Virus record (IMG/VR): IMGVR_UViG_3300033233_000001
Span: 1-64,000 of that record
Direction: 5' to 3' (one strand)
DNA length: 64,000 nt
Under the pieces are notes generated by a model. The model was not told the DNA's origin and made no database searches. It saw only the letters and a list, made by a program, of their open reading frames with translations. Position 1 is the stretch's first letter. Every line of letters begins with the position of its first letter. This document shows positions 1 through 48,215 of this stretch, one piece after another. Both the position numbers and the translations under genes were made by a program.

Positions 1-18
1 CTCTTTCCCTACAGACGG

Positions 19-3000
19 ATGCTGCCGACGGCTATTTCCACTCAGGCGGTATTCGATCTCAGTGCCTCGGACGGCGAAACGGACCCAAAAGGAGTGGGCG
101 TCCGTCGGACCGAATTTGGGGTCGCACTCGAAAATGAGCACGACGGACGCCCACTCATTTCCGTAGAAACCTCACATGTTTCGGACGAGCGGCCGGCGTC
201 TAGTGGCACAACGCAGAGAGAAAGCTCACTGATTTCGGACGACTGGATGATTTCGTCGGCGCTCGGCCCGGCGTCGGTAGCTGTCGGCGATGTCCCGGAC
301 ATGTCTGGGCTACTGGACATGTCTGGGCTACTGGATCGGGTTGACCTTGAGGTCGGTCTTGGGCGAGCGAAACAGATCGCCAGCGACGGATATCGCTCGC
401 TCGCAGGACGATCCGGATGGAAACCGCTCGACGTCGTCGTCGCTGAGGTCGAAGCCGAACTGGCGGCAGCCAAGACCGAGGACGACATCATCGAGGGGAT
501 GAGCGGAGAAGGGGCTCGTCTTGCCGCGCTCCGGCAGCGGGCCGCTCTTCCGATCCCGACCCGAGACCCCCAGGACTGGGCCACGACCGCACGCCTCGTT
601 GCGGAGGAAACACGGCAACTCGTTGAACGCTACCGAAACGAGCGCGGAAAGCTCGCTCTGCTCTGTCCAAGCCCATCGGTCGGAAAAACATTCGCGATGG
701 TTGCAGCCGCCTGCGACGAACAGAGGTCCGGTCGACGCGTGGGCTACGCGGTTTTGTCCAGAGCGATGCTCGCCGAAACCGAGGCGCGTATCCGCGCCGC
801 AAACACCAAAGTCCATCTCTACGTGATCGAGGGTCGACATGAGGGGAATTGCTCAGAATTTGAGTCGGTCCAGATCGCGGAGAAGCTCGGCTATTTTCCC
901 GGGACCAACGTCTGCCCAGAGTGTCCCAAGGTGCCGCCCAGGCCGTTTATCTTGAACGGCCGAAAGAACATGGCTCCCGTCTATGCGAAGCTAGACGCTG
1001 GCGGACTCTGCGAATACTACGCGTCTAGGGTGCGTGCCATTAGAGATGTCGGGAAAGCCGCTGCCACCCCCGCCATCCATCAATACCCGATCATCCTGAG
1101 CACCCATGCCGGGCTCATGATCGGCACCTCGCTCTTCAACCACTTCGGCAAAATGGTTCCGATGTGGGAACGAAATAATCAAGAGTTTTGGGAGTTTGAC
1201 ACGATCTTCGTCGACGAAGATCCGTCGAGCGCGGTCGAGACGGTCTCGACGGTCGACGAGCGGCAACTCACCTATGCGCCCATCGACGACGAGACAGGTC
1301 TGCCGACGTCAGACGCGTACACAGAGGCGACGAAGCTCTTCAAATTGGCCTTTAGGATCGCGGCTTCGGAGCGTGCCGCCGCACGAGCGGACGGCTTTCT
1401 TGACCAGGCAACCGATGCGCCGAGCCAGATCCACAAGCGCAAGCACGGAAGCGACTATGCCGGAGAAGACCTGCTGACCCTGCTAGAGCGCGCAGCGTTG
1501 ACGATGGGTTCGGTGGGGATCGAGACGATACTCGCCGCAGTCGGGTCCTACGTACAGCCAAGCCCAAAGACAACGAAGTCCGGCGAAGACGATGACGTGG
1601 AAGTCGTCGACGTTGCTCCTTGCCCACAGGGAGATCTGTTTTCGTCTGAAACGGCCGAACAGCCTAGGCAGAAGGCCACCAAGAAGAAAAAGACGGCCAA
1701 GAGGTCCAACAGCGGAGGAGAGTTCCTCAAGCGCCGCCTGACGCTAGAAACAGCAGCGAAGCTCTTTCCGCACAGGCACCTCCAGGCGATCTGTGCCCGA
1801 CTCCACGACGAGTATTGGGATCGACGTCAAGCGCACGCGGCCAAGCGGGCCGACATCGACCTGGCCTACCGCGTCTACCTCAGACTGGACACCGAGGAAG
1901 ACCCGAAAACAGGAGCCGAGGTCACCCATGGGTCTATTTCCGTACGGAGTTCCGTTACGTTCGGCGCCAAGAACGCCAACGTCGTCTGTGGCGACGCCTA
2001 CGGCGGCGTTGCGGACTACGAACGAATCTTTCAGAGATTTCTCCGCGACGGCAACGTCGACGTCATCAATCACCGGGCCAAGTGGCCGAAAACCTCGACT
2101 CTCATCCGAATCGCCGCGCGCTCTAGGGCATCCGATCTGTCGGTTCGCGGCGATTTCATCGGGCACTGCAACTGGCACATCCGCAGCATACTGGGACTCG
2201 AACCAGGTCGAAAAGTTCTTTTTTACGTCCACTTGGGGCTCAAGCCGTGGCTCGAAGAGTGGCTGGATCGCGAACCGCTCGCGGCTGCGCTCGACGGCTA
2301 CGCCATCGATCACTGGGGATCAGGGCGCGGCAAGGACATCTACCGCGACTTCGACTCCTTTATCGCGGTCAGCGAGTACATCCCGAACATCGGCGGGATG
2401 ATTCACGAGGCCAACGCACGGGTCGCTCCACTGACAATTTACGCTCCCAATCTGGAGCGCCATGTGACTCTAAGACCAAGAGTCAGAATCGCGCATGAAG
2501 GCTCCGGAAAGTCGTTCACGAACACGATCCAGGAAGGACCGTTGGGCTCGATCTTTCAGCGCACCGCGATTGACGAGCTAGCGCAGGCGGTACACCGCAT
2601 CCGGCCGGCGATGACGGGCACACGACCGAAGCGATGCTGGATCCTAGGCTTCCACGTACCGCTCTCAGACGAGCTTCTAGCCGCGACAAACGCGAGCGTA
2701 GTTCGCGAGCAGAACCGGGAGCACATCGCGACGGAGATGGGCATCGACCGCGACCGCGCTGCACGATTCCAAGCGGATCTTGGAGTCCTGGGGTTCGTGT
2801 CGCGCTACGAAGCGGCAGCGGCGATGGGCGAAGTCTACCGAACGCTCGGGTGTTGGAGCCCGATCTTCGCCCACGCACTTCTTGCTGTGCCAGAGTGCGG
2901 CGGCCTGAGCCGTGTCCTTGTCGAGGCGACCGAGGATCGAATCCTCGATGAGGAGGGCGAACCCCTAGAGAGATACTCTCAGGGGTTCGCCCCGTTCATC

Positions 3001-6374: not shown

Positions 6375-7697
6375 ATGGCGAATCGAAGCCCAATCTACAC
6401 GGTGGATTTTGCAGTTGCGCCTGACTCGCCGCAGGCGCTTGAGGGTCACCAGTTCTGGGGTCGATTTCCGTACGACGCTGGAGCCGTGAACACGGGCTCG
6501 TCGACCGGCGCGCGTCAGCTACCGAACGAAAAGGGAAATGCGCTGGCGAACCCGACGTTCGCGAGGCTTCAGGTCGGCGACTACGCTTGTACGAGCGACG
6601 CGACGCTGACAAACATCGGCTTCTATCAGTGCCGATCTGTCGGGACGGCTGGTGGTGCCGACGCTGTGTGGTGGCGTCTGGACGGTGTTAGGGAACAGTT
6701 TTTTGCTACGTCTACTTCGACGACCTTCACCGTCCCGGCGAACATCACGCAGGTGGATGTTTACCTTAGGCCAGGATCTGGCGGTGGCTCATCCGGCGCC
6801 GGTGGCGGCGCTGGCTTCGGGGGTGCGCCTGGCGGTGGCGGAGGCGGCGGCAAGGGCGGCGGTGCCGGTGGCGCGTGTTCGTTGCAAGGTCCATTTGGGA
6901 TCTCCACTACACCCGGAGAAGTGCTGACTCTAACGGTGGGAGCGGCTGGTACGGCGGGGGCGGCCGTGGCGGCGGGTGCCAATGGTCTTGCTGGCGGCGC
7001 TGGTGGCAACTCGGAGATCTTGCGCGGCGCAACGCGGTTGGTGCGGGCGGCTGAAGGTTCCAACATCGGTGGTGGTGCAGGTGCAGGCGCGGCGCTCGCC
7101 GGCACTGCGGGCACTGCGGGCGCAGTTGGTGTCGGCGGTACGACTGGCGCGGCCGGCGGCGTGGCCTGGCCTGGTGGTCCACTCAGCGGCGCGTCGTCCG
7201 CCGCGGTTACGGCCGGCGCCAACGGTGGCAACGGTGGCGCGGTCGCGGGCGGCGCGGGAGTGGCTGGCACCTCGATCAGCGCGGGCTCGCCGTTGACCTG
7301 GGGTATCAGCACGACCACGACGAACTCAACCGGCGGCGCTGCCGGTGCGACCGGCGGCACGAACGGCGGCGGCGGTGGCGGGGGCGCCGGTGGCTGCACA
7401 GGCAATGGCGACGAACGCGCGCTCTTTGGCCTCGCAATCCCCGCGCAGTCAGGCGCCGGTTCCGGCAAGGGCGCTGACGGCGGCGCTGGCGGTGCGGGCG
7501 CGGGCGCCGGGACCGGCGTCACGGGCACCGGAGGCGGGACGGGCTCCACTGGTTCGGGCGGTCGTGGCGGCGGCGGCGGCGGTGGCGGCGGCGGCGGCGG
7601 GGCCGGCGCGACGGCTGGCGGCGCTGGCGGCGGCGGCGGCGCTGGCGGCGTAGGCGACACCGGGTTTATTGTCATCGTCTGGGTGGGGACGACATGA
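6375..7697 (+). CDS. Glycine-rich tail fibre protein
   Basis: TFTVPANITQVDVYLRPGSGGG and GEVLTLTVGAAG motifs, long G/A tracts, ends GDTGFIVIVW. Confidence 0.8.
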   Translation: MANRSPIYTVDFAVAPDSPQALEGHQFWGRFPYDAGAVNTGSSTGARQLPNEKGNALANPTFARLQVGDYACTSDATLTNIGFYQCRSVGTAGGADAVWWRLDGVREQFFATSTSTTFTVPANITQVDVYLRPGSGGGSSGAGGGAGFGGAPGGGGGGGKGGGAGGACSLQGPFGISTTPGEVLTLTVGAAGTAGAAVAAGANGLAGGAGGNSEILRGATRLVRAAEGSNIGGGAGAGAALAGTAGTAGAVGVGGTTGAAGGVAWPGGPLSGASSAAVTAGANGGNGGAVAGGAGVAGTSISAGSPLTWGISTTTTNSTGGAAGATGGTNGGGGGGGAGGCTGNGDERALFGLAIPAQSGAGSGKGADGGAGGAGAGAGTGVTGTGGGTGSTGSGGRGGGGGGGGGGGGAGATAGGAGGGGGAGGVGDTGFIVIVWVGTT

Positions 7698-8245
7698 GGT
7701 ACGCGCTGATCAAGGACGGGACCGTGGAGACCGTGGCGGAAGCCGCTTCGTCCGACGTGTTCGTGCCGCTGGCTGACGAGGACGGGCAGGTCCCGGAGCA
7801 CTACTACGACGAAGCCGTGTTGCTTGCCGAAGGGTTTCGGGTCGAGTGCGGGGATCGGTGGGACGGCAAGTCCTTCGGTCCGCCGGTGCTCACGATCTCC
7901 GTCGACGATGCGAAGCAGATGCAGTACGCGCGAATCGATCAGCGGACGCGCGGGCTCATCTCGATCGGCTTCGAGCACCGAGGGATGAGGTTCTCGCTGT
8001 CGACAGAAGCGCAGGCGAATCTTTCACGTCTGCATCAGTTCGCCGACACGCTTGTGAGTGTTCGCTATCCGACGATCGACAACAGCGCTGAGCTTGTGCT
8101 TGCCGATGCCGACGAGATTCGCGCGTTCGTGCTGGATGCGGTGAGCGTTGTCAGCGACGCACTCCGGTCTGGAGTGGAGCAGAAAGCGGCCGTTCGTGCG
8201 TACACGACCGCCGCTGAAGTGCTCGCGTTTGCCGATCTGAGATAG
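7694..8245 (+). CDS. Tail fibre assembly/chaperone-like protein (DUF4376-like C-terminus)
   Basis: MRYALIKDGTVE start, GDRWDG, IRAYTTAAEV-type end; ATGA overlap with the fibre gene. Confidence 0.65.
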   Translation: MRYALIKDGTVETVAEAASSDVFVPLADEDGQVPEHYYDEAVLLAEGFRVECGDRWDGKSFGPPVLTISVDDAKQMQYARIDQRTRGLISIGFEHRGMRFSLSTEAQANLSRLHQFADTLVSVRYPTIDNSAELVLADADEIRAFVLDAVSVVSDALRSGVEQKAAVRAYTTAAEVLAFADLR

Positions 8246-10336: not shown

Positions 10337-11678
10337 TTGAAATCCTCCGCTCCCTAGCCCGGAGGCTGAGGAAGCGGATTCCCAGGCTCACGCCCAAGAT
10401 CTTCCTGCTTCAACCCCGACCGCACCGGATTCCGAAGAACACGATGTCTTACACCAGGTCCACAGGCAGTCACCGCGAGACCCGCGGCCAGTTGTCGCAG
10501 TCCAGCTGCGAGAACGTTACGTGCAGCATTCACGTCGCGGTCGTGCTCAGCGCCACACTCTGGGCACTGCCATTCGCGCACGCTCAGCGGCAGGTCATCG
10601 AGAAGATACCCGCAGCAGCTGCATGTCTTGGAACTCGGAAACCAACGGTCGACCTTGATCAGGGTACGACCGTACCACTCGCACTTGTACTCCAACTGCC
10701 TCACCAACTCGCCCCAGCCGACATCGCTGATGGCCCGTGCCAGGCTCCGGTTCTTGATCATCCCACTGACGTTGAGACCTTCAACCGCGATCACTTGGGT
10801 TTCGCGAACGAGGTTGGTCGTCAACTTGTGGAGATTGTCCAGACGCCGGTCTGCTACGCGAGCGTTCAACTTGCCGAGCTTGATGCGAGCCTTGTCCCGA
10901 TTCTTCGAGCCTTTCTTTTTGCGCGCGAGACTGCGCGACAGGAACCTCTTGCGCCCGAGTTCACGGTCGTCGTGACGCGGGTTCGCGACCTTTTCACCCG
11001 TCGAGAACGTAACCAGCGACGTGATGCCCAGGTCAAGGCCGACGGCGCTCTCGATGGGCAGCGGCTTCAAGCGCTCGACTTTGTCCTCGCAGAGCAGCGA
11101 GACGTGCCAGCGGCCGGCAGCGTCGAGACCGACGGTCACGGTCGAGGGGTCGACGTTCTCCGGAAGCGGACGACTCCAACGGATGCCGAGCGGCGTGTCC
11201 ATCTTCGCGAGGGTCAGCTTGCCGTCGCGCCAGGTGAACGCGCTACGCGTGAACTCTGCGGAGCCACCGTCACCCTTCTTCTTGAACCTCGGGAACCTCG
11301 CTTGTTTCTTGAAGAACCTCTGCCGAGCACCGTGCATGTGCCGCAAGGCCTGTTGGAGCGGGACACACGAAACCGTGTTCAGCCAAGCGAATTCCGGCAG
11401 CTTCTTCCACGCCGTCAGGTGGGCACTCTGCTTGTTGTACGTCGGCGACTTCTTGGTCGCCGCGTACGAATTGTTGCATTCGCCCAGGCTATGGTTGTAG
11501 ACCCAGCGTGCACAGCCGATTGTCCGACGCAGCAGGGGCTCCTGCTCGGGCGTCGGGTAGAACCGGTAGCGGAAGCCGCGGAGGACCACGCGCAGAGCGT
11601 AGGGCACTTCGGCGACGAGATCAAGAACCGTTTCCTCCCCTGCCTGCAAAGCCGAGGCAGGGGTTTCCACGGAGGATC
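10337..11678 (-). mobile_element. IS200/IS605-family tnpB-only element 1 (IS1341-like)
   Basis: Right end GAAT + CCGCTTCC/GGGAGCGG hairpin ending TCAA; left-end hairpin CCCCTGCC/GGCAGGGG; inferred target TCAG (11679-11682); in-frame empty-site reconstruction. Confidence 0.85.
10354..11670 (-). CDS. tnpB: TnpB RNA-guided nuclease (true start possibly GTG 11589)
   Basis: FRYRFYPTPEQ HTH, RuvC VGLDLG / IAVEGL / DRDVNAA, Zn finger CSCCG...CPECG. Confidence 0.95.
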   Translation of the reverse strand: METPASALQAGEETVLDLVAEVPYALRVVLRGFRYRFYPTPEQEPLLRRTIGCARWVYNHSLGECNNSYAATKKSPTYNKQSAHLTAWKKLPEFAWLNTVSCVPLQQALRHMHGARQRFFKKQARFPRFKKKGDGGSAEFTRSAFTWRDGKLTLAKMDTPLGIRWSRPLPENVDPSTVTVGLDAAGRWHVSLLCEDKVERLKPLPIESAVGLDLGITSLVTFSTGEKVANPRHDDRELGRKRFLSRSLARKKKGSKNRDKARIKLGKLNARVADRRLDNLHKLTTNLVRETQVIAVEGLNVSGMIKNRSLARAISDVGWGELVRQLEYKCEWYGRTLIKVDRWFPSSKTCSCCGYLLDDLPLSVREWQCPECGAEHDRDVNAARNVLAAGLRQLAAGLAVTACGPGVRHRVLRNPVRSGLKQEDLGREPGNPLPQPPG

Positions 11679-18726: not shown

Positions 18727-18729
18727 GAC

Positions 18730-19251
18730 TTACGGCACCGTCTGTTCGGCGAGTTCGACGAGGGGGCCTACGCGCAGGTCTTCGTCGATTTCGCGCCAGT
18801 GGATTCCGTAGCCGTCGGCGCCGAGCGTCCACTTCGAGCGCTGCTTCGCGGTCGCATCGCGCAGACGTGGGAACTGGTCCCAGCGAACGGAGATCGTACG
18901 GTCATCGGCGAGGAAGACGAGCATCGTTGGACCGCGGAACGCGACGCGAACGGCAAGCGGCTCGGGCTCGAAGTCGAAGAGGAGTCTCCTGCCGCGCGAT
19001 GAGCGCTCGACCGAAAAGACTTGGTCTCCGGCTTTGAGGCCAATGTTTTCGACTTGGTACCGCGGAACGGGGAGGAAGAGTGTATTGCCGATCTGAACGA
19101 TCGTGTGACGGCGCGCGCGACTGATCTTTCGCAGGACGGCTTCAAGAGCGCGCCGGAACTGCCTGTCGCTCATGGTACTCTCGTCCAGATCAATCAGGAC
19201 GCGCTCTCCGGTTGGTGCCCGTCGCTCGATGATCCGACGTGGCTTACTCAC
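18730..19251 (-). CDS. AbrB-like + DUF2442 antitoxin-type fusion
   Basis: IVQIGNTLFLPVP...GLKAGDQV (AbrB); WDQFPRLRDATAKQRSKW...GYGIHWREIDEDL (DUF2442). Confidence 0.75.
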   Translation of the reverse strand: MSKPRRIIERRAPTGERVLIDLDESTMSDRQFRRALEAVLRKISRARRHTIVQIGNTLFLPVPRYQVENIGLKAGDQVFSVERSSRGRRLLFDFEPEPLAVRVAFRGPTMLVFLADDRTISVRWDQFPRLRDATAKQRSKWTLGADGYGIHWREIDEDLRVGPLVELAEQTVP

Positions 19252-24099: not shown

Positions 24100-24909
24100 A
24101 TGACCTACCGAGCGGGCGTGCCGCTGTATGACCTTGACCTGCGTCGGGGCTCGTCGTTTTACACCGTGAACGCCGTGCCGATCCCTTCCTGGCGCTCGGT
24201 GCGAGCGCTGTACGGGCTCGGGGAGTCGCCGGCCCCGGCGCAGTTGGGTCGGATCAAGACGGCGGACGGCTGGTCGTACCAGATCACGCCGGAGGACGCG
24301 CTCTGGATCGCACGCTCGATCCAGTACGAGGGCGGGAACAGGATCGCAACGCTCTGGACCTACGCGCAGAGGCTCGCGCAGCGCCGCGGCACGAATCTCG
24401 CGACGCTCGTGCGCGGGCACAGCCAGCCGGTGAACCCGATGTGGGCGTCGGCGACGGCTTCAGGCTGCGTCGCGCATCCGGACCGGTGCACGCCGGCACA
24501 GCTTGCGCGCCGGCAGGAGGCAGCGACCCGACAGTGGGATGACCTGTCGTCTGCTTCGACAGTGCTGCGCTGGGCGCAGGCATACACGCCGAACGTCGTG
24601 CCGCGCGCGACGGACTTCGCCGACGCGACCGTCTCGCGGCACTTCTTGAGTCAGAACCCGCAGGCACGGGTCGTGATGCGCGACGGCAACTGGTATCTCG
24701 CGGAGGGCGCTGATAGCGCGCCGCGCGGTGGATCGATCGGGTGGCCGGAGAACTACGTCACGATCGAGTATGAGAGCCGGGTCGCTCGCCGAAGCCTCTT
24801 GGCCGGCGTGCCAAGCTGGGTTCCGTTTGCGGTGGCCGGGGGCGGTGGGCTGCTCGTGCTCGGCGGCGTCGCGGTCTGGGCCGCACGACAGCCGAAGGCG
24901 AAGATCTAA
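24100..24909 (+). CDS. SleB/hydrolase_2-like protein with C-terminal TM anchor
   Basis: EDALWIARSIQYEGG motif; hydrophobic C-terminus followed by basic tail. Confidence 0.45.
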   Translation: MTYRAGVPLYDLDLRRGSSFYTVNAVPIPSWRSVRALYGLGESPAPAQLGRIKTADGWSYQITPEDALWIARSIQYEGGNRIATLWTYAQRLAQRRGTNLATLVRGHSQPVNPMWASATASGCVAHPDRCTPAQLARRQEAATRQWDDLSSASTVLRWAQAYTPNVVPRATDFADATVSRHFLSQNPQARVVMRDGNWYLAEGADSAPRGGSIGWPENYVTIEYESRVARRSLLAGVPSWVPFAVAGGGGLLVLGGVAVWAARQPKAKI

Positions 24910-24925
24910 GGCAAGGAGCGCTGTC

Positions 24926-25903
24926 GTGAACTTCAAAAGCTACATCGTGTTGTTGCTGCTCGTCCTGTTTCCGTCGTGCGGGCCTCGTCCGCCTGATTCG
25001 GACGCTGGTCCGCCGGATTCTGGTCCGCCCGAGTTGACGCGCCTGCGCATCATCAACGGTTCGACCGGGACGCTCTGGATCTTCTATCAGATCGGCTCCG
25101 GCGGCGGCTCGATGTCAACGGCGCATCAGGTGCAACTCGCAGCAGGCGGACACATCGACTATCCGATCCCTGACGAAGGCCTCGCGGCCACTCGCTTCTG
25201 GGCAGGGTCTGGATGCGACGACACGGGGAACAACTGTGCGATCGGTCAGAGCGGTGGTCCCACGAGCGAGGGCTTCAACTGCCCGACGTACGGCTGTGCT
25301 CCGCCCGTCGACAGCAAGTTCGAGGGCACCTTCGGCTGTCTGCCGTCGGTGCCGACTGCCGACTGTCAGATCAACCCGTCGAGCCCGACGAGCGCGCCGC
25401 TTCCTACTACCGACTCCTGGGACACCAGCATGGTCGACGGCTTCACGCTGCCGTTCCGCGTCGACGTCATCGGCGACTGTCCGGGCGGCCCGACGAGCAA
25501 CGCGATCGACTGCTCGATGTTGCCGATGAGTATGTGTCCGACGGCCGAAGACCTCTCGACCGGCGGCATGTTCCCGGCGCTGGCCGCTGAGGACATGGAC
25601 GTCACGAACCCGTCGACGATGGCGATTGCCGGCTGCTACGCCGACTGTGCGCGCCTCACGTTCTCTCAGTGGGGCGGCCTCTCGTACGCGCCGGCTTCTC
25701 CCGAGGCGCAGATGTACTGCTGCCCGACGCCGCCGATCTCGCCCGATGCGTGTCGCACCGGGCCTGTCGCGAGCACGGGCTACACGGATCTTGTGCATCG
25801 GACCTGTCCGCAGGTCTATGCCTACTCGTACGACGACGGGACGGGGCTGTTCTCCTGTCCGGCCGGCGTGCGGTACGAGGTCACGTTCTACGCGGCGCAG
25901 TAG
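24926..25903 (+). CDS. Thaumatin-like (PR-5 family) secreted/lipoprotein
   Basis: RFWAGSGCD, KFEGTF, WDTSMVDGFTLP, CPQVYAYSYDD, FSC...YEVTF; 16 Cys after the signal Cys18; AAGGAG RBS. Confidence 0.85.
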   Translation: MNFKSYIVLLLLVLFPSCGPRPPDSDAGPPDSGPPELTRLRIINGSTGTLWIFYQIGSGGGSMSTAHQVQLAAGGHIDYPIPDEGLAATRFWAGSGCDDTGNNCAIGQSGGPTSEGFNCPTYGCAPPVDSKFEGTFGCLPSVPTADCQINPSSPTSAPLPTTDSWDTSMVDGFTLPFRVDVIGDCPGGPTSNAIDCSMLPMSMCPTAEDLSTGGMFPALAAEDMDVTNPSTMAIAGCYADCARLTFSQWGGLSYAPASPEAQMYCCPTPPISPDACRTGPVASTGYTDLVHRTCPQVYAYSYDDGTGLFSCPAGVRYEVTFYAAQ

Positions 25904-26201: not shown

Positions 26202-26477
26202 TCACCTCACCTTCGGCGGCGGGATCTTGAGCGGCGTTGTGCCAGCCTGCGCAGCGTCCCATGCGGCCTGTAGCTCGTCGCGTCGCAGTTCGATGAACGC
26301 CTTGATGAGCTTCTTCCCGGACGGGTGCATCTTTCCAACGATCATCGAGCCGTCATCGAGCGCGAACGATGCGGCATATTCCGCTGCGAAGGCGTGAATA
26401 TGTGGTCGATGATGCTGTGCGTTCTTCTCAAAGAAGACCGCGATAACGATCCCGTAAAACCTGCACAACTCGGCCAC
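26202..26477 (-). CDS. DUF4160 family protein
   Basis: ELCRFYGIVI.VF...HHRPHIHA...ELRRDELQAAW...IPP. Confidence 0.85.
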   Translation of the reverse strand: MAELCRFYGIVIAVFFEKNAQHHRPHIHAFAAEYAASFALDDGSMIVGKMHPSGKKLIKAFIELRRDELQAAWDAAQAGTTPLKIPPPKVR

Positions 26478-26948: not shown

Positions 26949-27977
26949 CTAGCCGATGATCGGCCCTGCCATCGTCACAGCCGCTTCGCGCACGCGCCGC
27001 AGGCTGTTGACGAGCGACGGCGGCGGAGCGCGTAGCTGGCCGAGGTAAAGGCGCGTCGCGTTAGGCCACGCGAGATCGAGGAGCCGCTGCGCGTCGTGCA
27101 GACGCACATCGTCTCTCTCGTCGCCGTCGCGGTCGGCGAGTCGCCGAAGACCACGCAGTACCTTGACCTTCGCCGGGTCGAGACCCGCGCGCACGGCGGC
27201 ACGTTTGACGATCGTCCAGATGACGTCGTTGTGCAGCGGACGTTCGGGGTCGAGGCCGGGCGCGATCGGACACGCTTTGGCCTCGCCGAAGACGCCGCTG
27301 TCGGGTCCCAGCCGCTTCAGTCGTCCGGCGCTGAGCCAGTGCGCCTGGATCGCGGTGTACGCCTCGTCGGGTAGCTTGAAGTTTTTCGGACCTCTCTTGC
27401 CAGTGACGCGATAGGTACGAGGTGACGTCGAGAGGCTGAGGTCGCGGATTCGCAGGTCGGCGACTTCGGATCGTCGCCGCCCGGTGTAGGCGAGAAAAAT
27501 AAGGACCGCGCGATCACGCATGCCGATCGGATCTGTCGGGAGTGCGTCGACCATCTTCTGGAAGTCGGCCCACTCGACGCCGGTCGCAGTGGTCGTCTCG
27601 TCGTCTGGGAGCACGTCCTTACGCCCGAGGAGATCGAACGGGTTCCGAGAGATGGTCTTCTTGTGTGCGAGGAACGTGAAGAACGCGTCGACGGCCGCGA
27701 GGCGCGTGCAGATCGTACTTTTCGAGTAGCCGTAGTTGACGAGGTAGCGCTTGTACTCCTCGGCGTCTTCGGCCGAGACCGAGCACAGGTCTTTCCACTG
27801 GACCAGGTCGAGGAACTGTCGGACACCATGTCGATACGTGCGCCGCGTGTTCTTCGGCTTGTTGACCAAGAATGCGTACATGGCGGCCACGATCGCACGC
27901 GTACGGTCGGGGTCGTCGCCGCCGATGGGCACGACATCGGATTCCGCTACGGACGAACGAGCTAGATTTTCGGCCAT
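26949..27977 (-). CDS. Tyrosine recombinase/integrase (XerC/D-like), divergent active site
   Basis: SAM-like N-domain (NTRRTY...STICTRLAAV), RDRAVLIFLAYTGRRRSEV, TGKRG, RGLRR, TRLY. Confidence 0.85.
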   Translation of the reverse strand: MAENLARSSVAESDVVPIGGDDPDRTRAIVAAMYAFLVNKPKNTRRTYRHGVRQFLDLVQWKDLCSVSAEDAEEYKRYLVNYGYSKSTICTRLAAVDAFFTFLAHKKTISRNPFDLLGRKDVLPDDETTTATGVEWADFQKMVDALPTDPIGMRDRAVLIFLAYTGRRRSEVADLRIRDLSLSTSPRTYRVTGKRGPKNFKLPDEAYTAIQAHWLSAGRLKRLGPDSGVFGEAKACPIAPGLDPERPLHNDVIWTIVKRAAVRAGLDPAKVKVLRGLRRLADRDGDERDDVRLHDAQRLLDLAWPNATRLYLGQLRAPPPSLVNSLRRVREAAVTMAGPIIG

Positions 27978-28057
27978 CGCGACGGATTCTAGTCCGGCTG
28001 TTGACAGAATCAAAAGTGTCGGACAATCTGTGCCTCTGCATGCAAATCAAGGACTTC

Positions 28058-28631: not shown

Positions 28632-29348
28632 ATGGGACGCGGGAATCACTTCGACGGCATCGGCGGGATCTTCTCGACGAGCATCTTCGGGCACACCGAC
28701 CGACTTCTGCCGGAGTGGGACGGTGACGACGAGCTTGATGCGCTCGTCGATGATGACGACAACGGTCGGCATCGGAGAGAGGAAGCCGTGTGGCCGGAGT
28801 CGATGAAGCTTGTGGAAGCGTCTCCGTCGTCGACGCTTCACGAGGAGAAGCCTTTCGAGTTCAAGTTTCCGCGTGTGGAGTCCGTGCCGCTGCCGCCGGG
28901 CGACTGGTACCTGTGGCTCGACGACGAACGCGACCCGCGCGTCGTGCTCGCGCCTGACAACGGCCCGAACTGCCTCGGCCTACGCTACGCGCAGTACGCG
29001 ACGACCGGGCTCGCCGCCGTCGACTGGAAGTGGGCGAAGTCGGTCACCGAGGCAATCGCTCTCTGCGAAGAGCACGGCGCGCCGAAGGTCATGGCTCTCG
29101 ATCATGACCTCGGCCTCGGTCCCGATCTCTCGACGCCGCAGACGGTCATGCCGTTCCTGCGCTGGCTCAGCGAGCGCGCCGATGTCACGACGTGGTTCGT
29201 GCACTCGGCGAACCCGGTCGGGCGCGACAACATCGCGAGCTACATGCGCTCGTGGGAGAGCGTGGCCGAGATCGTCGCTGCCAGCGAGAAGCGCATCGCC
29301 GTCGACTTCGACGAGGACGCGCCGCTCTCCCGCCCATCGCGCGCCTGA
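28632..29348 (+). CDS. Cyclic-phosphate-processing receiver-like domain protein
   Basis: LWLDDERDP, MALDHDLG, VHSANPVG motifs. Confidence 0.75.
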   Translation: MGRGNHFDGIGGIFSTSIFGHTDRLLPEWDGDDELDALVDDDDNGRHRREEAVWPESMKLVEASPSSTLHEEKPFEFKFPRVESVPLPPGDWYLWLDDERDPRVVLAPDNGPNCLGLRYAQYATTGLAAVDWKWAKSVTEAIALCEEHGAPKVMALDHDLGLGPDLSTPQTVMPFLRWLSERADVTTWFVHSANPVGRDNIASYMRSWESVAEIVAASEKRIAVDFDEDAPLSRPSRA

Positions 29349-31400: not shown

Positions 31401-32228
31401 ATGGCCGATCCCATCCACCTCTTCGACATCGCGGCGTACCTGCACCGGGCCATGTACGTCGTGTACGGGGACAACGCGTCGACCACGCCGTCGACGGACG
31501 AGACGTTCATCGTGCACGCGTGCGGCATGCTCGCGAACACGATGGAGAAGCTCGGTGTGCGTCGCATGGCGGTTGTGCGTGACTCGGTCGTGCCGTCGAA
31601 GCGATGCGAGGAGTACCCGGCGTACAAGGCCGACCGCAAGCCGCACACGCCCGTGTTCGCGGCGCAGTCGCCGCGCTTCTTCAGCGCGCTCCGCGACGTG
31701 AGCGTCGCGGTCGTCGAGGCCGAGGCGTACGAGGCCGACGATCTGATCGCGACGCTCGTCGGCCAGGAGCGCGGCACGCAGTACGTCGTCGTCTCGTCGG
31801 ACAAAGATCTGCTCGCATGCCTCGCGACGGAGCGCACGAGCTTCTACGATCCGATGAAGAACGTCGAGGTGACGCGCGAGATGTTCGTCGCGCGCTTCGG
31901 TATCCAGCCGAGCCAGATGTACGACTACACCGGCCTCGTCGGCGACACCGCCGACGGCATCCCTGGCGTGCCTGGCATCGGTCCGAAGACGGCTGCGAAT
32001 CTGCTGCGGGATTTCGGTACGCTCGACGAGGTGTACGACGAGAGTCGAGCACAGGCGCTCGCCGAGGCTGTGCCAGGCGCGAAGACGCTCGACAAGCTCC
32101 TGGCGCACAAGGAGGACGCGCTGCTCTCGCGGCGGCTCGCTCGTCCGTGGATCTGCAAGGGCCTGACGCTGACGGGTGACGCGTTCGCTGCGCCGCCGTC
32201 GAGCGTCGTGCGGAGGGCATGCGGATGA
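31401..32228 (+). CDS. 5'-3' exonuclease / flap endonuclease (PolA N-domain-like)
   Basis: YKADR, YEADDLIATL, SSDKDL, GDTADGIPGVPGIGPKTA. Confidence 0.95.
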   Translation: MADPIHLFDIAAYLHRAMYVVYGDNASTTPSTDETFIVHACGMLANTMEKLGVRRMAVVRDSVVPSKRCEEYPAYKADRKPHTPVFAAQSPRFFSALRDVSVAVVEAEAYEADDLIATLVGQERGTQYVVVSSDKDLLACLATERTSFYDPMKNVEVTREMFVARFGIQPSQMYDYTGLVGDTADGIPGVPGIGPKTAANLLRDFGTLDEVYDESRAQALAEAVPGAKTLDKLLAHKEDALLSRRLARPWICKGLTLTGDAFAAPPSSVVRRACG

Positions 32229-33176: not shown

Positions 33177-34475
33177 ACCTAACCCCGGCCTAAAGGCCGA
33201 GGCTTTGCACCTGAGTGACAACATGGAGATGCCCGTAGGTACCCCCAACACTCGACGCGTCCGGCCGGGTTACAGCGGCCAGGCTCATGGCACTGTACGT
33301 CGCGAGACCGCGACGGCTGATGTTCTGAGCCGCGATGGTATCGGCATGACCAGCGTGGCCACACCATACGCATTCAAAGACTGCCTGGCTCTTCCGGTTC
33401 GCCTTGCTGACGAAGCCGCACGCCGGACACGTCCTCGACGTGTTCCGGGGGTCGACCACCATCAGCGCGACGCCCGCCAAGCACGCCTTGTAGGTCACGA
33501 AGCCACGCAGCTGAGCAAAAGACCACGAGGAGCGCACCCGACGCTGTGCCTTCCGAACCGTTGTCCGCTCGCGGATGCCCGTCAGGTCTTCCAGGGCAAT
33601 CCCACGTCCGGTGTCTTTGGCACGGGTGACGATCTTCTTGCTCACGCGATGGTTCGTGTCTCTAGCGAATCTCATCTCCTTCCTGCGACGCTTCTTCAGA
33701 AGCCGCTTCGCACTCTTGGTACCAACAGACTGGAGCTTCGAGCGGGTGTTAGCGTACCGCTCGCGGACGACATTCAGGTGGTCTCCCGCGAAGACCGTAC
33801 CGTCCGAGTCGGTCGTGATGTTCACGACGCCGAGGTCTACGCCGAGAAAGTCGACGGGCTCTGCGGGCTTCTCGTACGGGATGCTGACGCTGACGAGCAG
33901 GTAGAACTCGTTGTCGCGGAAGACCAAGTCGGCCTCGCCGTACTTCGAGGAGAGCAGGCGTTCTCGGTCAGCGTCGCGGAAGAGGATGGGACAGCGGATG
34001 CGACCGTCGAGTGTCGTGAGCGTGATTTCCGTCGACTCCTTCTTGAACGAGTACAGTCTCGTGTCGTAGGCGACGCTGCCGCGCGGGCGGAAGGTCGGGC
34101 AGATACTGCGGTCGCGGACGTAGGCGTCGCAGACCTTTGCAATCGTCCGAATGGCCATCTGCGACGGGAGGCCGAAATCGGCTCGCATGTCGTAGTAGAA
34201 CAGCCGCTGGAGCCGGCGCTTGTCGGCGAGCTTGTGCTCGAAGGCTCGGGGCGCGAGCCAGTTGGCCGCAGCGTTCATGCGCTCCATGGTCGAGAGCAGC
34301 GAGTCGCGCGGCGCCTCGTCGAGCACGAGCTTGCCCTGGACAACCAGAACGGTCGGCGCGTCGGGCTTCTTCGGCTTGCACTTGCGAACCACGGGCGGAT
34401 GGTACCACAGATCTGGAGCACGGAGCAGCGCTTCCTCCCCGCCCTGAAGGACGGGGCTTCCGCGCTGGAGATGTG
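33173..34475 (-). mobile_element. IS200/IS605-family tnpB-only element 2
   Basis: Right end AAAG-CCTCGGCC/GGCCGGGG...GGTTTAC; left-end hairpin CCCCGTCC..GGGCGGGG; target TCAC (34476-34479); TnpA-tail remnant RFLPALKDGASA on + strand. Confidence 0.9.
33190..34392 (-). CDS. tnpB: TnpB RNA-guided nuclease, different clade from elements 1 and 3
   Basis: RuvC FLGVDLG / IALEDL / HADTIAA; CPACG...CVWCG. Confidence 0.95.
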   Translation of the reverse strand: MVRKCKPKKPDAPTVLVVQGKLVLDEAPRDSLLSTMERMNAAANWLAPRAFEHKLADKRRLQRLFYYDMRADFGLPSQMAIRTIAKVCDAYVRDRSICPTFRPRGSVAYDTRLYSFKKESTEITLTTLDGRIRCPILFRDADRERLLSSKYGEADLVFRDNEFYLLVSVSIPYEKPAEPVDFLGVDLGVVNITTDSDGTVFAGDHLNVVRERYANTRSKLQSVGTKSAKRLLKKRRRKEMRFARDTNHRVSKKIVTRAKDTGRGIALEDLTGIRERTTVRKAQRRVRSSWSFAQLRGFVTYKACLAGVALMVVDPRNTSRTCPACGFVSKANRKSQAVFECVWCGHAGHADTIAAQNISRRGLATYSAMSLAAVTRPDASSVGGTYGHLHVVTQVQSLGL

Positions 34476-46585: not shown

Positions 46586-46830
46586 GTGAGCACGAGTTCG
46601 ATCCGAAGTGTCCGGACTGTCGACCGGTACTGCTGGACCCGACGACCGGTCGCATGCTGGGGCCGAAAGACCCGGCGATGGTTGCAGCCAGCAAGGCCTG
46701 GGACGAGCAGCTGACGCGCGAACAGCAGGAGGCGTGTCATCGGGTCTGGGTGAAGAACAGCCGAGATCCCGCCGACCTGGAAGCGCTGGAGTGCTTCGCG
46801 GCCATGATGCAGAAGATGGCTGGGAACTGA
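46582..46830 (+). CDS. Hypothetical protein
   Basis: CPDC; GTGA overlap. Confidence 0.6.
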   Translation: MSEHEFDPKCPDCRPVLLDPTTGRMLGPKDPAMVAASKAWDEQLTREQQEACHRVWVKNSRDPADLEALECFAAMMQKMAGN

Positions 46831-46844
46831 GAGGAGACACCAAG

Positions 46845-48215
46845 ATGGGTAGCGGCGAGAACATTTTGCTAGCCAGCGACAGTTACAAGATTTCTCACTG
46901 GCGGCAATATCCGAAGGGCACGCAGCGCGTGTATTCCTTCATGGAGTCTCGCGGTGGCGTCCACGCCGACGTGACCTTCTTCGGCCTCCAGTACCTGCTG
47001 ACGCGGTACCTCGAAGGGCCGGTGGTTACGGCCGAAGATCTGGCCGAAGCCACTGACTTCTACCGCGCGCACTTCGGCGCAGATCTGCTGAACGTCGACG
47101 GCTGGCAGCACATCATCGACAAGCACGGCGGCCGTCTACCGGTCGAGATCTGCGCCGTTCCGGAGGGCACGGTCGTGCCCGTGCGCAACGTGCTCATGAC
47201 GATCGAGAACACGGACCCGAAGGTCCCGTGGCTGACGAATTTTCTAGAGACGTTGCTGTGCCAGGTGTGGTACCCGGTCACGGTTGCCACGCAATCGCGC
47301 GCGATGCGCAAGCTGATCCTCGACGCGCTGGAGCATACCGGCGACCCGTCTCTCGTGGATTTCAAGCTCCACGACTTCGGCTTCCGCGGCAGCACGTCGG
47401 TCGAGTCCGCTGGCATCGGCGCGGCGGCGCACCTCGTGAACTTCAAGGGCACTGACACCGTCGCTGGCCTCGTGCTCGCGCGCGACTACTACAGCGAGCC
47501 GATGGCCGGTTTTAGCGTGCCTGCCAGCGAACACAGCACCATCACGTCCTGGGGCCGCGAGCACGAGGTCGACGCGTACCGCAACATGCTCGACCAGTTC
47601 CCGACCGGGCTCGTGGCCTGCGTGTCGGACAGCTACGACATCTACGCGGCCTGTCGCGATCTCTGGGGTACCGAGCTTCGAGACCGCGTGCTCTCGCGCG
47701 ACGGCTGTCTCGTCGTGCGGCCGGACAGCGGCGATCCGCCGACCGTCGTCGTCACGGTGCTCGACATCCTCGGCGAGAAGTTCGGGTTCACCATCAACGA
47801 GAAGGGCTACCGCGTGCTCGACCCGCACGTCCGCGTCATCCAGGGAGACGGCATCGACTACGAGATGCTTGGGAAGATCCTCTCTGCGATGGAGCGTGCC
47901 CGCTGGTCGGCCGATAACGTCGCGTTCGGCTCTGGCGGGGGCCTTCTCCAGAAGGTGAACCGCGACACGCAGAAGTTTGCGATCAAGTGCTCGGCCGTGC
48001 AGATCAACGGTGAATGGCGTGACGTGCTCAAGGACCCGGTAACCGACCCTGGGAAGAAGTCGAAAGCCGGGCGCCTGCGTCTCGTCCGCGAGGACGGCGT
48101 GTACAAGACAGTGACCGGCGAGGGCCCGACGCTGCTGGAGCCGGTGTTCCGTGATGGCGTCGTGTTGCGGCGACAGACGTTCGCTGACGTGCGCCGCCGG
48201 GCTGTTGCCACATGA
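46845..48215 (+). CDS. nadV: Nicotinamide phosphoribosyltransferase (NAMPT)
   Basis: SDSYKISH, HDFGFRG, PASEHS, VSDSYD, RPDSGDP, IQGDGI, FGSGGGLLQ, RDTQKFAIKCS. Confidence 0.97.
   Translation: MGSGENILLASDSYKISHWRQYPKGTQRVYSFMESRGGVHADVTFFGLQYLLTRYLEGPVVTAEDLAEATDFYRAHFGADLLNVDGWQHIIDKHGGRLPVEICAVPEGTVVPVRNVLMTIENTDPKVPWLTNFLETLLCQVWYPVTVATQSRAMRKLILDALEHTGDPSLVDFKLHDFGFRGSTSVESAGIGAAAHLVNFKGTDTVAGLVLARDYYSEPMAGFSVPASEHSTITSWGREHEVDAYRNMLDQFPTGLVACVSDSYDIYAACRDLWGTELRDRVLSRDGCLVVRPDSGDPPTVVVTVLDILGEKFGFTINEKGYRVLDPHVRVIQGDGIDYEMLGKILSAMERARWSADNVAFGSGGGLLQKVNRDTQKFAIKCSAVQINGEWRDVLKDPVTDPGKKSKAGRLRLVREDGVYKTVTGEGPTLLEPVFRDGVVLRRQTFADVRRRAVAT

What the first reader, a model, noticed from the sequence alone, without database searches (positions are those of the whole stretch)
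24926..25903. Eukaryote-style long thaumatin-like protein in a phage-like genome
Seen: signal/lipoprotein-like N-terminus, 16 further cysteines, and all five acidic-cleft-type residues (R in RFW, E in KFE, D and D in WDTSMVDG, D in YSYDD). Known: PR-5/thaumatin-like proteins of plants, fungi and some animals have 16 Cys and bind or cleave beta-1,3-glucan, with antifungal activity. Inference: an auxiliary gene that arms a predatory soil host against fungi, or a glucan-binding surface protein. I do not know of a characterised phage example.
Basis: partly seen in the sequence, partly recalled or inferred. Interest (0 to 1): 0.75.

Follow-up and report, generated by a model that had tools for sequence, protein, structure and literature searches.

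The report
Thaumatin-like lipoprotein carried by huge phages
The gene is a real, intact thaumatin-like (GH152-type) protein with an export signal. It belongs to a previously undescribed branch of that family found on huge-phage contigs rather than in bacterial genomes, so some giant phages may give their hosts a surface protein that binds or cuts beta-glucan.

Summary
Window 24926-25903 (+) encodes a 325-aa protein that passes the Pfam Thaumatin threshold (60.9 vs 27.4 bits). It folds with confidence (pLDDT 90) into a thaumatin fold (Foldseek E 2.6e-14 to Mal d 2). It has a signal peptide with one Cys, 16 further Cys, and all five cleft residues, which are invariant in 60 homologues.

It is not "eukaryote-style". 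Its relatives are a rare, patchy bacterial family (Nannocystis, Acidobacteriota, Cellvibrio and others). There the domain is often fused to the beta-1,3-glucan modules CBM56, CBM6 and GH16.

The window protein sits in a sub-clade with no named bacterial genome. All nine members whose surroundings I checked lie on ORFan-dense, phage-like contigs. One of these is a 257-kb contig with clear terminase, portal, protease and major head genes 4 kb from its thaumatin gene.

The window's own 297.7-kb record looks like a huge phage: 126-bp terminal repeat, 36 tRNAs, many PHROG hits. I could not recognise any capsid, terminase or tail gene in it.

Most likely it is a phage accessory gene for an exported, membrane-tethered protein that binds or hydrolyses beta-1,3-glucan. 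Host, benefit and activity are untested. The antifungal and predatory-host idea is speculation.

The parts
24913..24918 (+). Shine-Dalgarno sequence AAGGAG, 7 nt upstream of the GTG start
   Evidence: Read directly from the sequence.
24926..25903 (+). Thaumatin-like protein gene, 325 aa plus stop. Cleft residues: R90 (25193-25195), E133 (25322-25324), D166 (25421-25423), D171 (25436-25438), D303 (25832-25834).
   Evidence: ORF and translation. Pfam PF00314 at 60.9 bits. AF2 pLDDT 90.1. Foldseek against plant, fungal and bacterial TLP structures. Residues invariant in the family.
24926..24979 (+). Signal peptide ending in an atypical lipobox L-F-P-S-C (C18)
   Evidence: Sequence. Lipobox-like N-termini in 32 of 39 clade members. 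Low pLDDT in residues 1-30.
24980..25036 (+). Pro/Asp/Gly-rich flexible linker (residues 19-37) between the anchor Cys and the folded domain
   Evidence: Sequence. pLDDT 52-75 in this stretch. Length varies among homologues.
25037..25900 (+). Thaumatin-fold domain (residues 38-325), with inserts relative to the roughly 200-aa plant proteins
   Evidence: Pfam match over residues 49-321. pLDDT above 90 over most of it. Alignments of about 285-295 columns to chains of about 200-235 residues.
24100..24909 (+). Upstream ORF, 269 aa, with a C-terminal hydrophobic helix and unknown function. It ends 17 nt before the TLP start, so the two are probably co-transcribed.
   Evidence: ORF list and public gene call. 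No Pfam, PDB or GenBank-phage match.
25940..25953 (+). Weak terminator-like hairpin 37 nt after the TLP stop. The next genes converge from the minus strand.
   Evidence: Consensus scan found 3 sites against 1.7 expected, so this is weak.
26949..28013 (-). Tyrosine recombinase (phage integrase family), 1 kb downstream of the TLP gene
   Evidence: Pfam Phage_integrase plus SAM-like N-terminal domains.
26202..26477 (-). DUF4160 small protein between the TLP gene and the integrase
   Evidence: Pfam PF13711, E 1.4e-14.

Best explanation
The gene is an accessory (moron-type) gene of an uncultured huge phage. It encodes an exported thaumatin-like (CAZy GH152-type) protein tethered to a membrane.

Proposed mechanism (inferred):
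1. The protein is made in the infected cell or lysogen.
2. It is sent through the Sec pathway by its signal peptide.
3. It is probably lipidated on C18.
4. It folds in the oxidising periplasm with about eight disulfides.
5. It is held on a flexible Pro/Asp linker at the cell envelope.
6. There its conserved acidic cleft binds, and probably hydrolyses, beta-1,3-linked glucan such as laminarin, or fungal, oomycete or algal wall glucan.

Shown here: family, fold, conserved cleft residues, signal sequence, phage-contig clade, variable position among related phages, and the glucan-related domain partners of bacterial relatives.

Inferred, not shown: lipidation, location, substrate, catalysis, and what the phage gains.
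For: Family and fold:
- Pfam 60.9 bits.
- AF2 pLDDT 90.1, pTM 0.84.
- Foldseek E 2.6e-14, target-normalised TM 0.77 to Mal d 2, and matches to thaumatin, osmotin, zeamatin and the Amycolatopsis TLP 7p22.

Cleft and export:
- Cleft residues are invariant in 60 homologues and align to plant TLPs.
- Canonical SD and a signal peptide. Lipobox-like N-termini in 32 of 39 clade members.
- A protein with a signal peptide and many disulfides cannot be a cytoplasm-assembled virion part (inference).

Glucan link:
- The same TLP domain is fused to CBM56, CBM6/35, GH16, SKN1/KRE6 and Ricin_B in Cellvibrio, Microbulbifer, Reinekea and metagenomic relatives.
- Thaumatin-like proteins form CAZy GH152. A fungal beta-1,3-glucanase and an insect beta-1,3-1,4-glucanase of that family have been characterised (bioRxiv 10.1101/2024.06.03.597214).

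Phage carriage:
- G000 is an IMG/VR virus record with 90% CheckV completeness.
- Bases 11-136 equal the last 126 bases.
- 36 tRNAs.
- PHROG hits include NAMPT, RNA ligases, RtcB, helicases, polymerase parts and many phage-only families of unknown function.
- A RecT-like gene is shared with cultured jumbo phages.
- Two dark proteins have nearest ESM Atlas clusters labelled Uroviricota.

Clade:
- The careful tree puts the window in a 30-row clade (support 92/91) with no named bacterial genome. All nine members whose surroundings were checked are phage-like.
- One of them, a 257-kb, 40% GC record, has TerL (2.6e-25), portal (1.8e-27), protease and major head protein (2.7e-46) 3.8 kb from its TLP gene.

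Moron behaviour:
- Contig L097 is syntenic with G000 197.9-217.8 kb at 54-90% amino-acid identity, yet carries its TLP gene inside that block, whereas G000 has its copy at 25 kb.
Against: - No capsid, terminase, portal, sheath or baseplate gene was recognised in G000. This covers six-frame Pfam searches (positive control) and PHROGs on about 130 ORFs. The only lead is a weak head-protease hit (E 7e-4). G000's viral nature therefore rests on indirect evidence.
- The window's own lipobox has Pro at -2, so lipidation is uncertain.
- No enzymatic or binding data exist for any member of this bacterial and phage clade.
- Many plant TLPs with the same cleft bind glucan but do not cleave it (my own knowledge of the PR-5 literature).
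- No RNA data: only the source DNA run holds the sequence.
- The split between the phage clade and the bacterial clade has support of 92/91 and 87/82, which is good but not maximal.
- Only 9 of about 40 clade members had their surroundings checked.
Confidence: 0.55

Rival explanations
1. It is a non-catalytic glycan-binding or receptor-masking lipoprotein. The phage-encoded surface protein binds a polysaccharide or a host envelope component to block superinfection or change adhesion, without hydrolysing glucan. This would resemble known phage exclusion lipoproteins.
For: - Signal peptide and lipobox-like anchor across the clade.
- Moron-like variable position.
- In the bacterial fusions the TLP domain sits beside a separate catalytic GH16, so it could itself be a binding module.
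- Many plant TLPs bind but do not cleave glucan (own knowledge).
Against: - Every residue of the acidic cleft, including the Glu/Asp set, is invariant across phage, bacterial and protist members. This fits catalysis at least as well as binding.
- Characterised GH152 members are glucanases.
- There is no similarity to known exclusion lipoproteins.
Confidence: 0.2
2. One reading: an anti-eukaryote weapon. The protein is displayed on the cell or on outer-membrane vesicles of a predatory host such as a myxobacterium. It damages fungal or oomycete walls or membranes, or deters grazers, and so benefits the lysogen.
For: - PR-5 proteins are antifungal (established knowledge).
- Chromosomal relatives occur in Nannocystis, Sorangium and other Myxococcota.
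- Asp-Ala-Gly-rich linkers recur in clade members.
- The record has 65% GC.
Against: - The host is unknown. The phage core gene was not found in 401 Myxococcota genomes.
- The clade also occurs in a 40% GC phage.
- The closest bacterial cousins include non-predatory polysaccharide degraders such as Cellvibrio and Microbulbifer, which points to nutrition as much as to attack.
- The sample is sediment.
Confidence: 0.12
3. It acts on the host's own glucan. The enzyme would trim a host beta-glucan exopolysaccharide, capsule or periplasmic glucan, to ease release of progeny or to remove receptors.
For: - It is exported to the envelope.
- In one relative the gene lies near Amidase_2 and Peptidase_M23 genes, which are lysis-type enzymes.
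- In G002 it lies 3.8 kb from the head genes, in a late-gene neighbourhood.
Against: - There is no conserved linkage to lysis genes across contigs.
- No host glucan is known.
- Neighbours differ in every contig.
Confidence: 0.08
4. G000 is not a virus. It would be a large plasmid-like or otherwise unknown extrachromosomal element that was classified as viral, and the TLP gene is simply one of its accessory genes.
For: - No structural or packaging gene was recognised in G000 by Pfam or PHROGs.
- Its conserved 311-aa core protein and 987-aa protein have no match in 50,697 GenBank phage records.
- A PcfJ-like gene sits next to the TLP gene in a relative.
Against: - 36 tRNAs, a terminal direct repeat, and dense small ORFans.
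- Many phage-specific PHROG families.
- Uroviricota-labelled nearest clusters for two dark proteins.
- A weak prohead-protease hit.
- CheckV completeness of 90%.
- A TLP of the same clade lies in a record with unmistakable head genes.
- No replication, partition or conjugation genes turned up in the scans, though I did not search for them specifically.
Confidence: 0.12

Closest known systems
Plant PR-5 / thaumatin-like proteins (Mal d 2, Pru av 2, osmotin, zeamatin, thaumatin)
   Same: Same Pfam family and fold. The cleft residues Arg, Asp, Asp and Asp align. Most disulfide positions are shared, and the protein is secreted.
   Different: - Only about 20-24% identity.
- About 290 residues in the domain against about 200, because of several inserts.
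- The N-to-C terminal disulfide is lost.
- There are extra Cys pairs in the inserts.
- It has a bacterial signal or lipoprotein anchor.
- It is encoded by a phage-like element.
Bacterial 'thaumatin family proteins' (Nannocystis pusilla, Nannocystaceae ST9, Thermoanaerobaculia, Marinicella, Cellvibrio/Hahella/Microbulbifer CBM-GH16 fusions)
   Same: Same long sub-family at 47-60% identity, with the same inserts and invariant residues. Nannocystis members are also lipoproteins.
   Different: - They are chromosomal and form the sister group in the tree.
- Many are multi-domain, with CBM56, CBM6 or GH16.
- They keep the first and last Cys pair.
CAZy family GH152 (Lentinula edodes TLG1 beta-1,3-glucanase; Bemisia tabaci Bta13961 beta-1,3-1,4-glucanase)
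   Same: Thaumatin-fold proteins with demonstrated glucanase activity. This is the most likely biochemical model.
   Different: Those are eukaryotic, soluble secreted enzymes. No prokaryotic or viral member is reported as characterised in the text I read. No activity is known for this clade.
Thaumatin-like protein of Amycolatopsis rifamycinica (PDB 7p22)
   Same: A solved bacterial TLP structure, matched by the model at E 4e-10.
   Different: Short type (about 220 aa), 16-17% identity, from an actinomycete. It is not in this clade.
TLPs of eukaryotic viruses (Tupanvirus, Feldmannia species virus, Satyrvirus, closterovirus p30-type proteins)
   Same: They are virus-encoded thaumatin-fold proteins.
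   Different: Their hosts are eukaryotes. Identity is 10-19%. None is a virus of bacteria.
Phage-encoded carbohydrate-active auxiliary genes and phage moron lipoproteins
   Same: An accessory gene, variable in position, with cellular homologues, whose product acts at the cell surface rather than in the virion.
   Different: I found no earlier report of a thaumatin/GH152 gene in a phage in the libraries searched.

Membership tests
Thaumatin family (Pfam PF00314; PR-5; CAZy GH152) | Sequence matches the family HMM above the curated threshold | tested here: met
   60.9 bits against a cut-off of 27.4, E 1.7e-16, over profile positions 6-207 of 209. The six-frame search repeats it.
Thaumatin family (Pfam PF00314; PR-5; CAZy GH152) | Thaumatin fold | tested here: met
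   AF2 pLDDT 90.1. 28 solved TLP and thaumatin chains match at E of 1e-9 or better, with target-normalised TM 0.66-0.77.
Thaumatin family (Pfam PF00314; PR-5; CAZy GH152) | Acidic-cleft residues Arg, Glu, Asp, Asp, Asp (REDDD) | tested here: met
   R90, D166, D171 and D303 align to plant TLPs and are invariant in 60 homologues, as is E133. The E133 equivalence is positional only.
Thaumatin family (Pfam PF00314; PR-5; CAZy GH152) | The canonical 16 Cys / 8 disulfides of L-type TLPs. This defines a subtype, not the family. | tested here: not met
   The first (NGC) and last (TFYCP) Cys are both absent, giving NGS and TFYAAQ. Within the clade the two covary perfectly: 19 have both, 16 have neither, none is mixed. 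The total of 16 is reached through insert Cys.
Thaumatin family (Pfam PF00314; PR-5; CAZy GH152) | Beta-1,3-glucan binding or endo-glucanase activity | not testable with these tools
   Context only: fusions to CBM56, CBM6, GH16 and SKN1 in relatives, and activities of characterised GH152 enzymes.
Bacterial lipoprotein (signal peptidase II substrate) | Positive n-region, hydrophobic core, and lipobox [LVI][ASTVI][GAS]C | tested here: inconclusive
   K4, then IVLLLLVLF, then F-P-S-C18. Pro at -2 departs from the consensus. 32 of 39 clade members with complete N-termini have a regular lipobox-like motif. Lipidation itself cannot be tested here.
Tailed huge phage (Caudoviricetes), for the window's own record G000 | Terminase large subunit, portal, HK97-fold major capsid protein | tested here: inconclusive
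   None found by Pfam six-frame search or by PHROGs. There is only a weak head-protease hit, E 7e-4. The proteins may be too divergent. Indirect signs are positive.
Tailed huge phage (Caudoviricetes), for the relative G002 that carries a TLP of the same clade | Terminase large subunit, portal, protease, major head protein | tested here: met
   phrog_2 at 2.6e-25, phrog_16240 at 1.8e-27, phrog_18299 at 3.8e-11 and phrog_2522 at 2.7e-46, at record positions 216.5-230.3 kb. The TLP gene lies at 234,103-235,086.
Phage moron / auxiliary gene | Non-core gene with cellular homologues and a variable position among related phages | tested here: met
   L097 is syntenic with G000 197.9-217.8 kb but has its TLP gene inside that block. 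Neighbours differ in all nine contigs.

The most novel reading that the evidence does not exclude
A whole clade of GH152-type thaumatin lipoproteins may live mainly on huge phages and may have moved between unrelated phage lineages (65% and 40% GC). If so, infected cells are refitted with a surface beta-1,3-glucanase. That would be the first phage-borne enzyme of this family, letting phages steer use of laminarin or fungal-wall glucan, or attack on eukaryotes, in sediments and waters.
Probability: 0.3. Interest if true: 0.75.

Novelty: new variant of a known kind. Interest (0 to 1): 0.55.

Why it matters
Thaumatin-like proteins are textbook plant defence proteins and a barely studied glycoside hydrolase family (GH152). 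Here the family has a distinct sub-clade carried by uncultured huge phages, in at least two unrelated phage lineages, always with an export or anchor signal and an intact cleft.

If the protein is an active glucanase, phages would be adding a beta-1,3-glucan-processing activity to their hosts. Beta-1,3-glucan includes laminarin, a major aquatic carbon pool, and the walls of fungi and oomycetes. That would widen the known range of viral auxiliary carbohydrate genes.

It would also offer a compact, disulfide-rich prokaryote-type GH152 for biochemical and structural study.

The work also exposes a widespread lineage of roughly 200-300 kb elements whose structural genes current profile libraries cannot recognise. 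Its core protein has more than 200 relatives in metagenomes.

Tried and rejected
Hallmark genes in G000:
- Six-frame Pfam searches found nothing for Terminase_6N, Terminase_6C, TerL_ATPase, Phage_capsid, Phage_portal, Phage_sheath_1, GPW_gp25 and Baseplate_J. The tool does find PF00314 in the same record.
- PHROGs on about 130 ORFs gave no structural family except one weak protease hit.
- Pfam on 10 candidates from the block at 218-252 kb found nothing.
- phmmer against the PDB for three candidates found nothing.
- IMG/VR peptide scans for two candidates found no relatives.
- A Walker-A scan was uninformative.

Comparison with other phages:
- Tunturiibacter phage Tunturi_5 shares only RecT-like, RtcB and HNH-type genes with G000, and no structural genes.
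- The G002 head-module proteins have no tblastn match in G000.
- The G002 major head protein does not match the G000 311-aa core family by profile comparison.

The conserved 311-aa core protein:
- The model has pLDDT 69.
- BFVD and the wide PDB search gave no meaningful match. The long N-terminal helix dominated the results.
- ESM Atlas shape hits were only hypothetical Uroviricota clusters.

Host assignment:
- TnpB homologues reach at most 67% identity and are unnamed.
- The core gene was not found in 401 Myxococcota genomes.

Other checks:
- Expression: only the source DNA run holds the locus.
- Upstream 269-aa ORF: no Pfam, PDB or phage match.
- Rfam on the window: no hit.

Ideas rejected:
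- A giant virus of eukaryotes. The gene has a bacterial SD and lipobox-type signals across the clade, and the record has tyrosine integrases and bacterial DUF pairs.
- A chimeric assembly. A Logan contig spans the locus with no differences.
- A virion depolymerase. A signal peptide and a disulfide-rich fold do not fit a cytoplasm-assembled virion part.
Full report
THE OBSERVATION

Window 24926-25903 (+) is an open reading frame of 325 codons. The public gene call on the source contig (JGI sample 3300033233, contig of 297,749 bp) has the same coordinates. The GTG start is preceded by a consensus Shine-Dalgarno sequence, AAGGAG, at 24913-24918, 7 nt upstream. A longer reading frame from 24728 would overlap the upstream gene, which ends at 24909, so 24926 is the likely start.

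The product begins MNFKSYIVLLLLVLFPSC and continues with a Pro/Asp/Gly-rich stretch. It has 17 cysteines: C18 plus 16 others.

An independent assembly of the only public run that holds the sequence has one 40.9-kb contig covering 22500-28000 with no differences and even depth. The gene is therefore not an assembly chimera.

WHAT THE PROTEIN IS

- Pfam Thaumatin (PF00314) matches at 60.9 bits against a cut-off of 27.4, over nearly the whole profile.
- With an alignment of 60 homologues, AlphaFold2 gives a confident model: pLDDT 90.1, pTM 0.84. Only the signal and linker, residues 1-37, are of low confidence.
- Foldseek against the PDB returns only thaumatin-fold proteins at the top. These are apple Mal d 2 (E 2.6e-14, target-normalised TM 0.77), cherry Pru av 2, a Puccinia TLP, thaumatin, osmotin, zeamatin and the bacterial TLP of Amycolatopsis.
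- The domain is about 290 residues against about 200 in plants. The excess is in inserts.
- In the 60-sequence alignment R90, E133, D166, D171 and D303 are invariant.
- A profile of that alignment places R90, D166, D171 and D303 opposite the corresponding residues of plant TLP structures. E133 lies just past the aligned block, so its equivalence rests on position and invariance.

The 16 Cys are not the plant 16. The canonical first Cys (N-G-C) is Ser here, and the canonical last Cys (T-F-Y-C-P) is missing. Across the sub-clade these two positions covary perfectly: 19 sequences have both, 16 have neither, and none is mixed. This is what loss of one disulfide as a pair would look like. Extra Cys pairs sit in inserts such as GCLPSVPTADC.

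WHO ITS RELATIVES ARE

A search of 5.8 billion proteins gives 304 hits. The best are metagenomic, at 72-79% identity. The nearest named ones are "thaumatin family protein" of Nannocystis pusilla and Nannocystaceae ST9 (59%), Thermoanaerobaculia, Acidobacteriota, Marinicella and Nisaea.

An exhaustive phmmer run over 1.84 billion cluster representatives finds only 449 clusters at E up to 1e-3, and 151 at E up to 1e-30.

A motif scan of one genome for each of 185,579 prokaryote species finds 64 species with a relative. These are:
- Nannocystis species at 58-60%;
- Cellvibrio, Hahella, Microbulbifer, Reinekea, Marinicella, Nisaea, Thiohalocapsa and Acidobacteriota at 46-56%;
- Polyangiales and Kofleriaceae at 35-40%.

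The Pfam family was found in 4 of 401 sampled Myxococcota genomes. The family is therefore bacterial as well as eukaryotic, but rare and patchy in bacteria. "Eukaryote-style" is not the right description.

A group of marine-protist transcripts (MMETSP) with an N-terminal membrane anchor forms a separate, well-supported clade.

THE PHAGE-ASSOCIATED CLADE

In a quick tree of 116 rows the window protein falls in a 42-row clade (SH-aLRT 96) that contains no row from a named bacterial genome. In a careful tree of 72 rows the same group (30 rows) has support of 92/91. All close bacterial-genome sequences form its sister group, with support of 87/82.

I looked at the surroundings of nine members:
- the window itself;
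- IMG/VR contigs of 199 kb and 257 kb;
- a 277-kb JGI contig;
- contigs of 58, 52, 43, 33 and 17 kb.

All nine are dense in small ORFs with almost no Pfam hits. They carry scattered phage-type genes: DNA methylases, RNA ligase, TnpB, thymidylate kinase, Amidase_2 and Peptidase_M23. Several share other ORFan genes with G000.

The decisive case is the 257-kb record (G002, about 40% GC, CheckV 60%). It has a terminase large subunit (phrog_2, 2.6e-25), a portal (1.8e-27), a head maturation protease (3.8e-11) and a major head protein (phrog_2522, 2.7e-46) at 216.5-230.3 kb. Its TLP gene is at 234,103-235,086, 3.8 kb further on. A TLP of this clade therefore does sit in an unmistakable tailed phage.

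A second, distant group of IMG/VR contigs (L004, L006, L007; 40% identity) clusters with other bacterial sequences. This suggests at least one further acquisition.

No TLP is found by tblastn in 50,697 GenBank phage records. One plasmid has one, in Comamonas endophytica at 36% identity. In BFVD the only thaumatin-fold proteins are from viruses of eukaryotes. Full-text searches found no paper linking thaumatin to phages.

IS THE WINDOW'S OWN RECORD A PHAGE?

G000 is an IMG/VR virus record of 297,749 bp, 65% GC, with CheckV completeness of 90%.

Evidence for a phage:
- Bases 11-136 are identical to the last 126 bases, which points to a complete circular or terminally redundant genome.
- It has 36 tRNA genes, most of them in a cluster at 173-188 kb.
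- PHROG hits include NAMPT, several RNA ligases, RtcB, helicases, polymerase parts, a PurZ-type adenylosuccinate synthetase, integrases, TnpB, and many phage-only families of unknown function.
- An 817-aa RecT-like protein has relatives in cultured jumbo phages.
- Two otherwise dark proteins have their nearest ESM Atlas clusters labelled as Uroviricota.

Evidence against:
- I could not recognise any capsid, terminase, portal, sheath or baseplate gene. This holds for eight six-frame Pfam searches with a working positive control, for PHROGs on about 130 ORFs, and for Pfam or PDB searches of candidates.
- The only lead is a weak head-protease match (E 7e-4) for the ORF at G000 237,002-238,102.

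The best-conserved gene I found is a 311-aa protein at G000 213,601-214,536. It has 217 relatives at 58-84% identity on contigs of up to 259 kb, all unannotated. It has no match in GenBank phages or in 401 Myxococcota genomes. Its model (pLDDT 69) shows a long N-terminal helix plus a beta-sandwich and is not assignable.

I conclude that G000 is very probably a huge phage of an uncultured lineage whose structural proteins are beyond current profiles. A non-viral element is not excluded; I put that at about 0.12.

THE GENE IS AN ACCESSORY, MOBILE ONE

Contig L097 is collinear with G000 197.9-217.8 kb at 54-90% amino-acid identity. It carries its TLP gene inside that block, between the homologues of G000 201,364-202,443 and 197,891-200,854. 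G000 has nothing at that spot and keeps its copy at 25 kb.

The neighbours of the TLP gene differ in every contig examined. In the window the gene follows a 269-aa ORF of unknown function with a C-terminal hydrophobic helix, 17 nt upstream. Downstream lie convergent small genes, including a DUF4160 gene, and a tyrosine integrase at 26949-28013. The upstream ORF has no detectable relatives in Pfam, the PDB or GenBank phages.

WHAT IT MOST LIKELY DOES

The signal peptide, the single Cys at the end of the hydrophobic core, the flexible linker and the many disulfides together indicate export and folding outside the cytoplasm. That rules out a virion component (inference).

Most clade members have a regular lipobox (32 of 39). 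The window's own motif, L-F-P-S-C, has Pro at -2, so lipidation is likely but uncertain.

The invariant cleft argues for a conserved ligand.

The best clue to that ligand comes from bacterial relatives in which the same domain is fused to other modules:
- CBM56 (Cellvibrio, Microbulbifer and metagenomic proteins);
- CBM6 and CBM35 (Reinekea);
- GH16 and SKN1/KRE6-type glucanase domains;
- a ricin-type lectin.

From my own knowledge of the CAZy classification, CBM56 and GH16 laminarinases are beta-1,3-glucan modules.

Thaumatin-like proteins form CAZy family GH152. According to the preprint I read, its characterised members are a fungal beta-1,3-glucanase and an insect beta-1,3-1,4-glucanase (bioRxiv 10.1101/2024.06.03.597214).

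The best-supported reading is therefore a phage-encoded, envelope-tethered protein that binds, and probably hydrolyses, beta-1,3-glucan.

What the phage gains is open. The options are:
- access to laminarin-type carbon during a long infection;
- binding or exclusion at the cell surface;
- action on a host glucan;

None of these can be decided here. There are no expression data and no host assignment.

NOVELTY AND VERDICT

The protein family, its fold and its bacterial members are known. Viral TLPs are known only from viruses of eukaryotes. What is new is a distinct, export-signal-bearing sub-clade carried by huge phages of at least two unrelated lineages, with a clade-specific loss of the terminal disulfide.

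I class it as a new variant of a known kind, of moderate interest (0.55). The interest would rise if glucanase activity and a host benefit were shown.

Noticed in passing
window 11-136 and G000 297,624-297,749: The first 126 bases after position 10 are identical to the last 126 bases of the 297,749-bp record. IMG/VR lists the record as linear. This suggests a complete circular or terminally redundant genome.
   Followed up: partly
G000 173,060-187,859 (outside the window; loci L015-L016): ARAGORN finds 36 tRNA genes in the record. Most lie in one minus-strand cluster, and one is predicted to read the amber stop codon UAG (anticodon CTA). The window itself has none.
   Followed up: partly
G000 117,581-118,942 (L011:12581-13939): A 453-aa protein matches phrog_1211, a PurZ-type adenylosuccinate synthetase, at E 2e-83. 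This raises the question of whether the phage replaces adenine with 2-aminoadenine. I did not look for DatZ or MazZ partners.
   Followed up: no
G000 113,858-116,569 (L011:8858-11566): An RtcB-type tRNA ligase of 903 aa matches its PHROG family in two separated stretches (83-428 and 784-824). This would fit an inserted element such as an intein.
   Followed up: no
window 10354-11670 (-), 33190-34392 (-), 48671-50299 (+): There are three TnpB / IS605-OrfB (Cas12f-like TNB domain) genes in the window and more elsewhere in G000. The best outside relatives are only 67% identical.
   Followed up: partly
window 46608-48215 (+): A nicotinamide phosphoribosyltransferase (NAMPT_N plus NAPRTase; phrog_448 at 6e-169). 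This is a phage NAD-salvage gene.
   Followed up: no
G000 213,601-214,536 (L017:18604-19536, minus strand): A 311-aa protein with 217 relatives at 58-84% identity on contigs of up to 259 kb, all hypothetical and without Pfam hits. It is absent from GenBank phages. It marks a widespread, unannotated lineage of large elements whose structural genes no profile recognises.
   Followed up: partly
window 6375-7697 (+), overlapping ORF 6761-7978 (-): This region gives many staggered tblastx matches to unrelated viral contigs (L003, L006, L091) and coincides with a GC-skew peak. It is probably a repetitive, low-complexity protein. It has no PHROG or Pfam hit.
   Followed up: no
window 26202-26477 (-) and window 18729-19172 (-) (L024:3805-4248): DUF4160 and DUF2442 small proteins are present, and these two families often occur as pairs. 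There are also cREC_REC (28632-29348), DUF4326, YggL and a 5'-3' exonuclease (31401-32228) nearby.
   Followed up: no
proteins P0081-P0120 (subset): A sister clade of the family comes from marine-protist transcriptomes (MMETSP, Tara). These proteins have an N-terminal cytoplasmic tail and a membrane anchor in place of a signal peptide. The direction of transfer between protists and bacteria is open.
   Followed up: partly
L003 / G002 record 216.5-235.1 kb: In the 40% GC huge phage the TLP gene lies 3.8 kb after the major head gene, next to a Mom-like DNA modification / HNH gene. This is a very different genome from G000 carrying a TLP of the same clade, which implies transfer between phage lineages.
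   Followed up: partly
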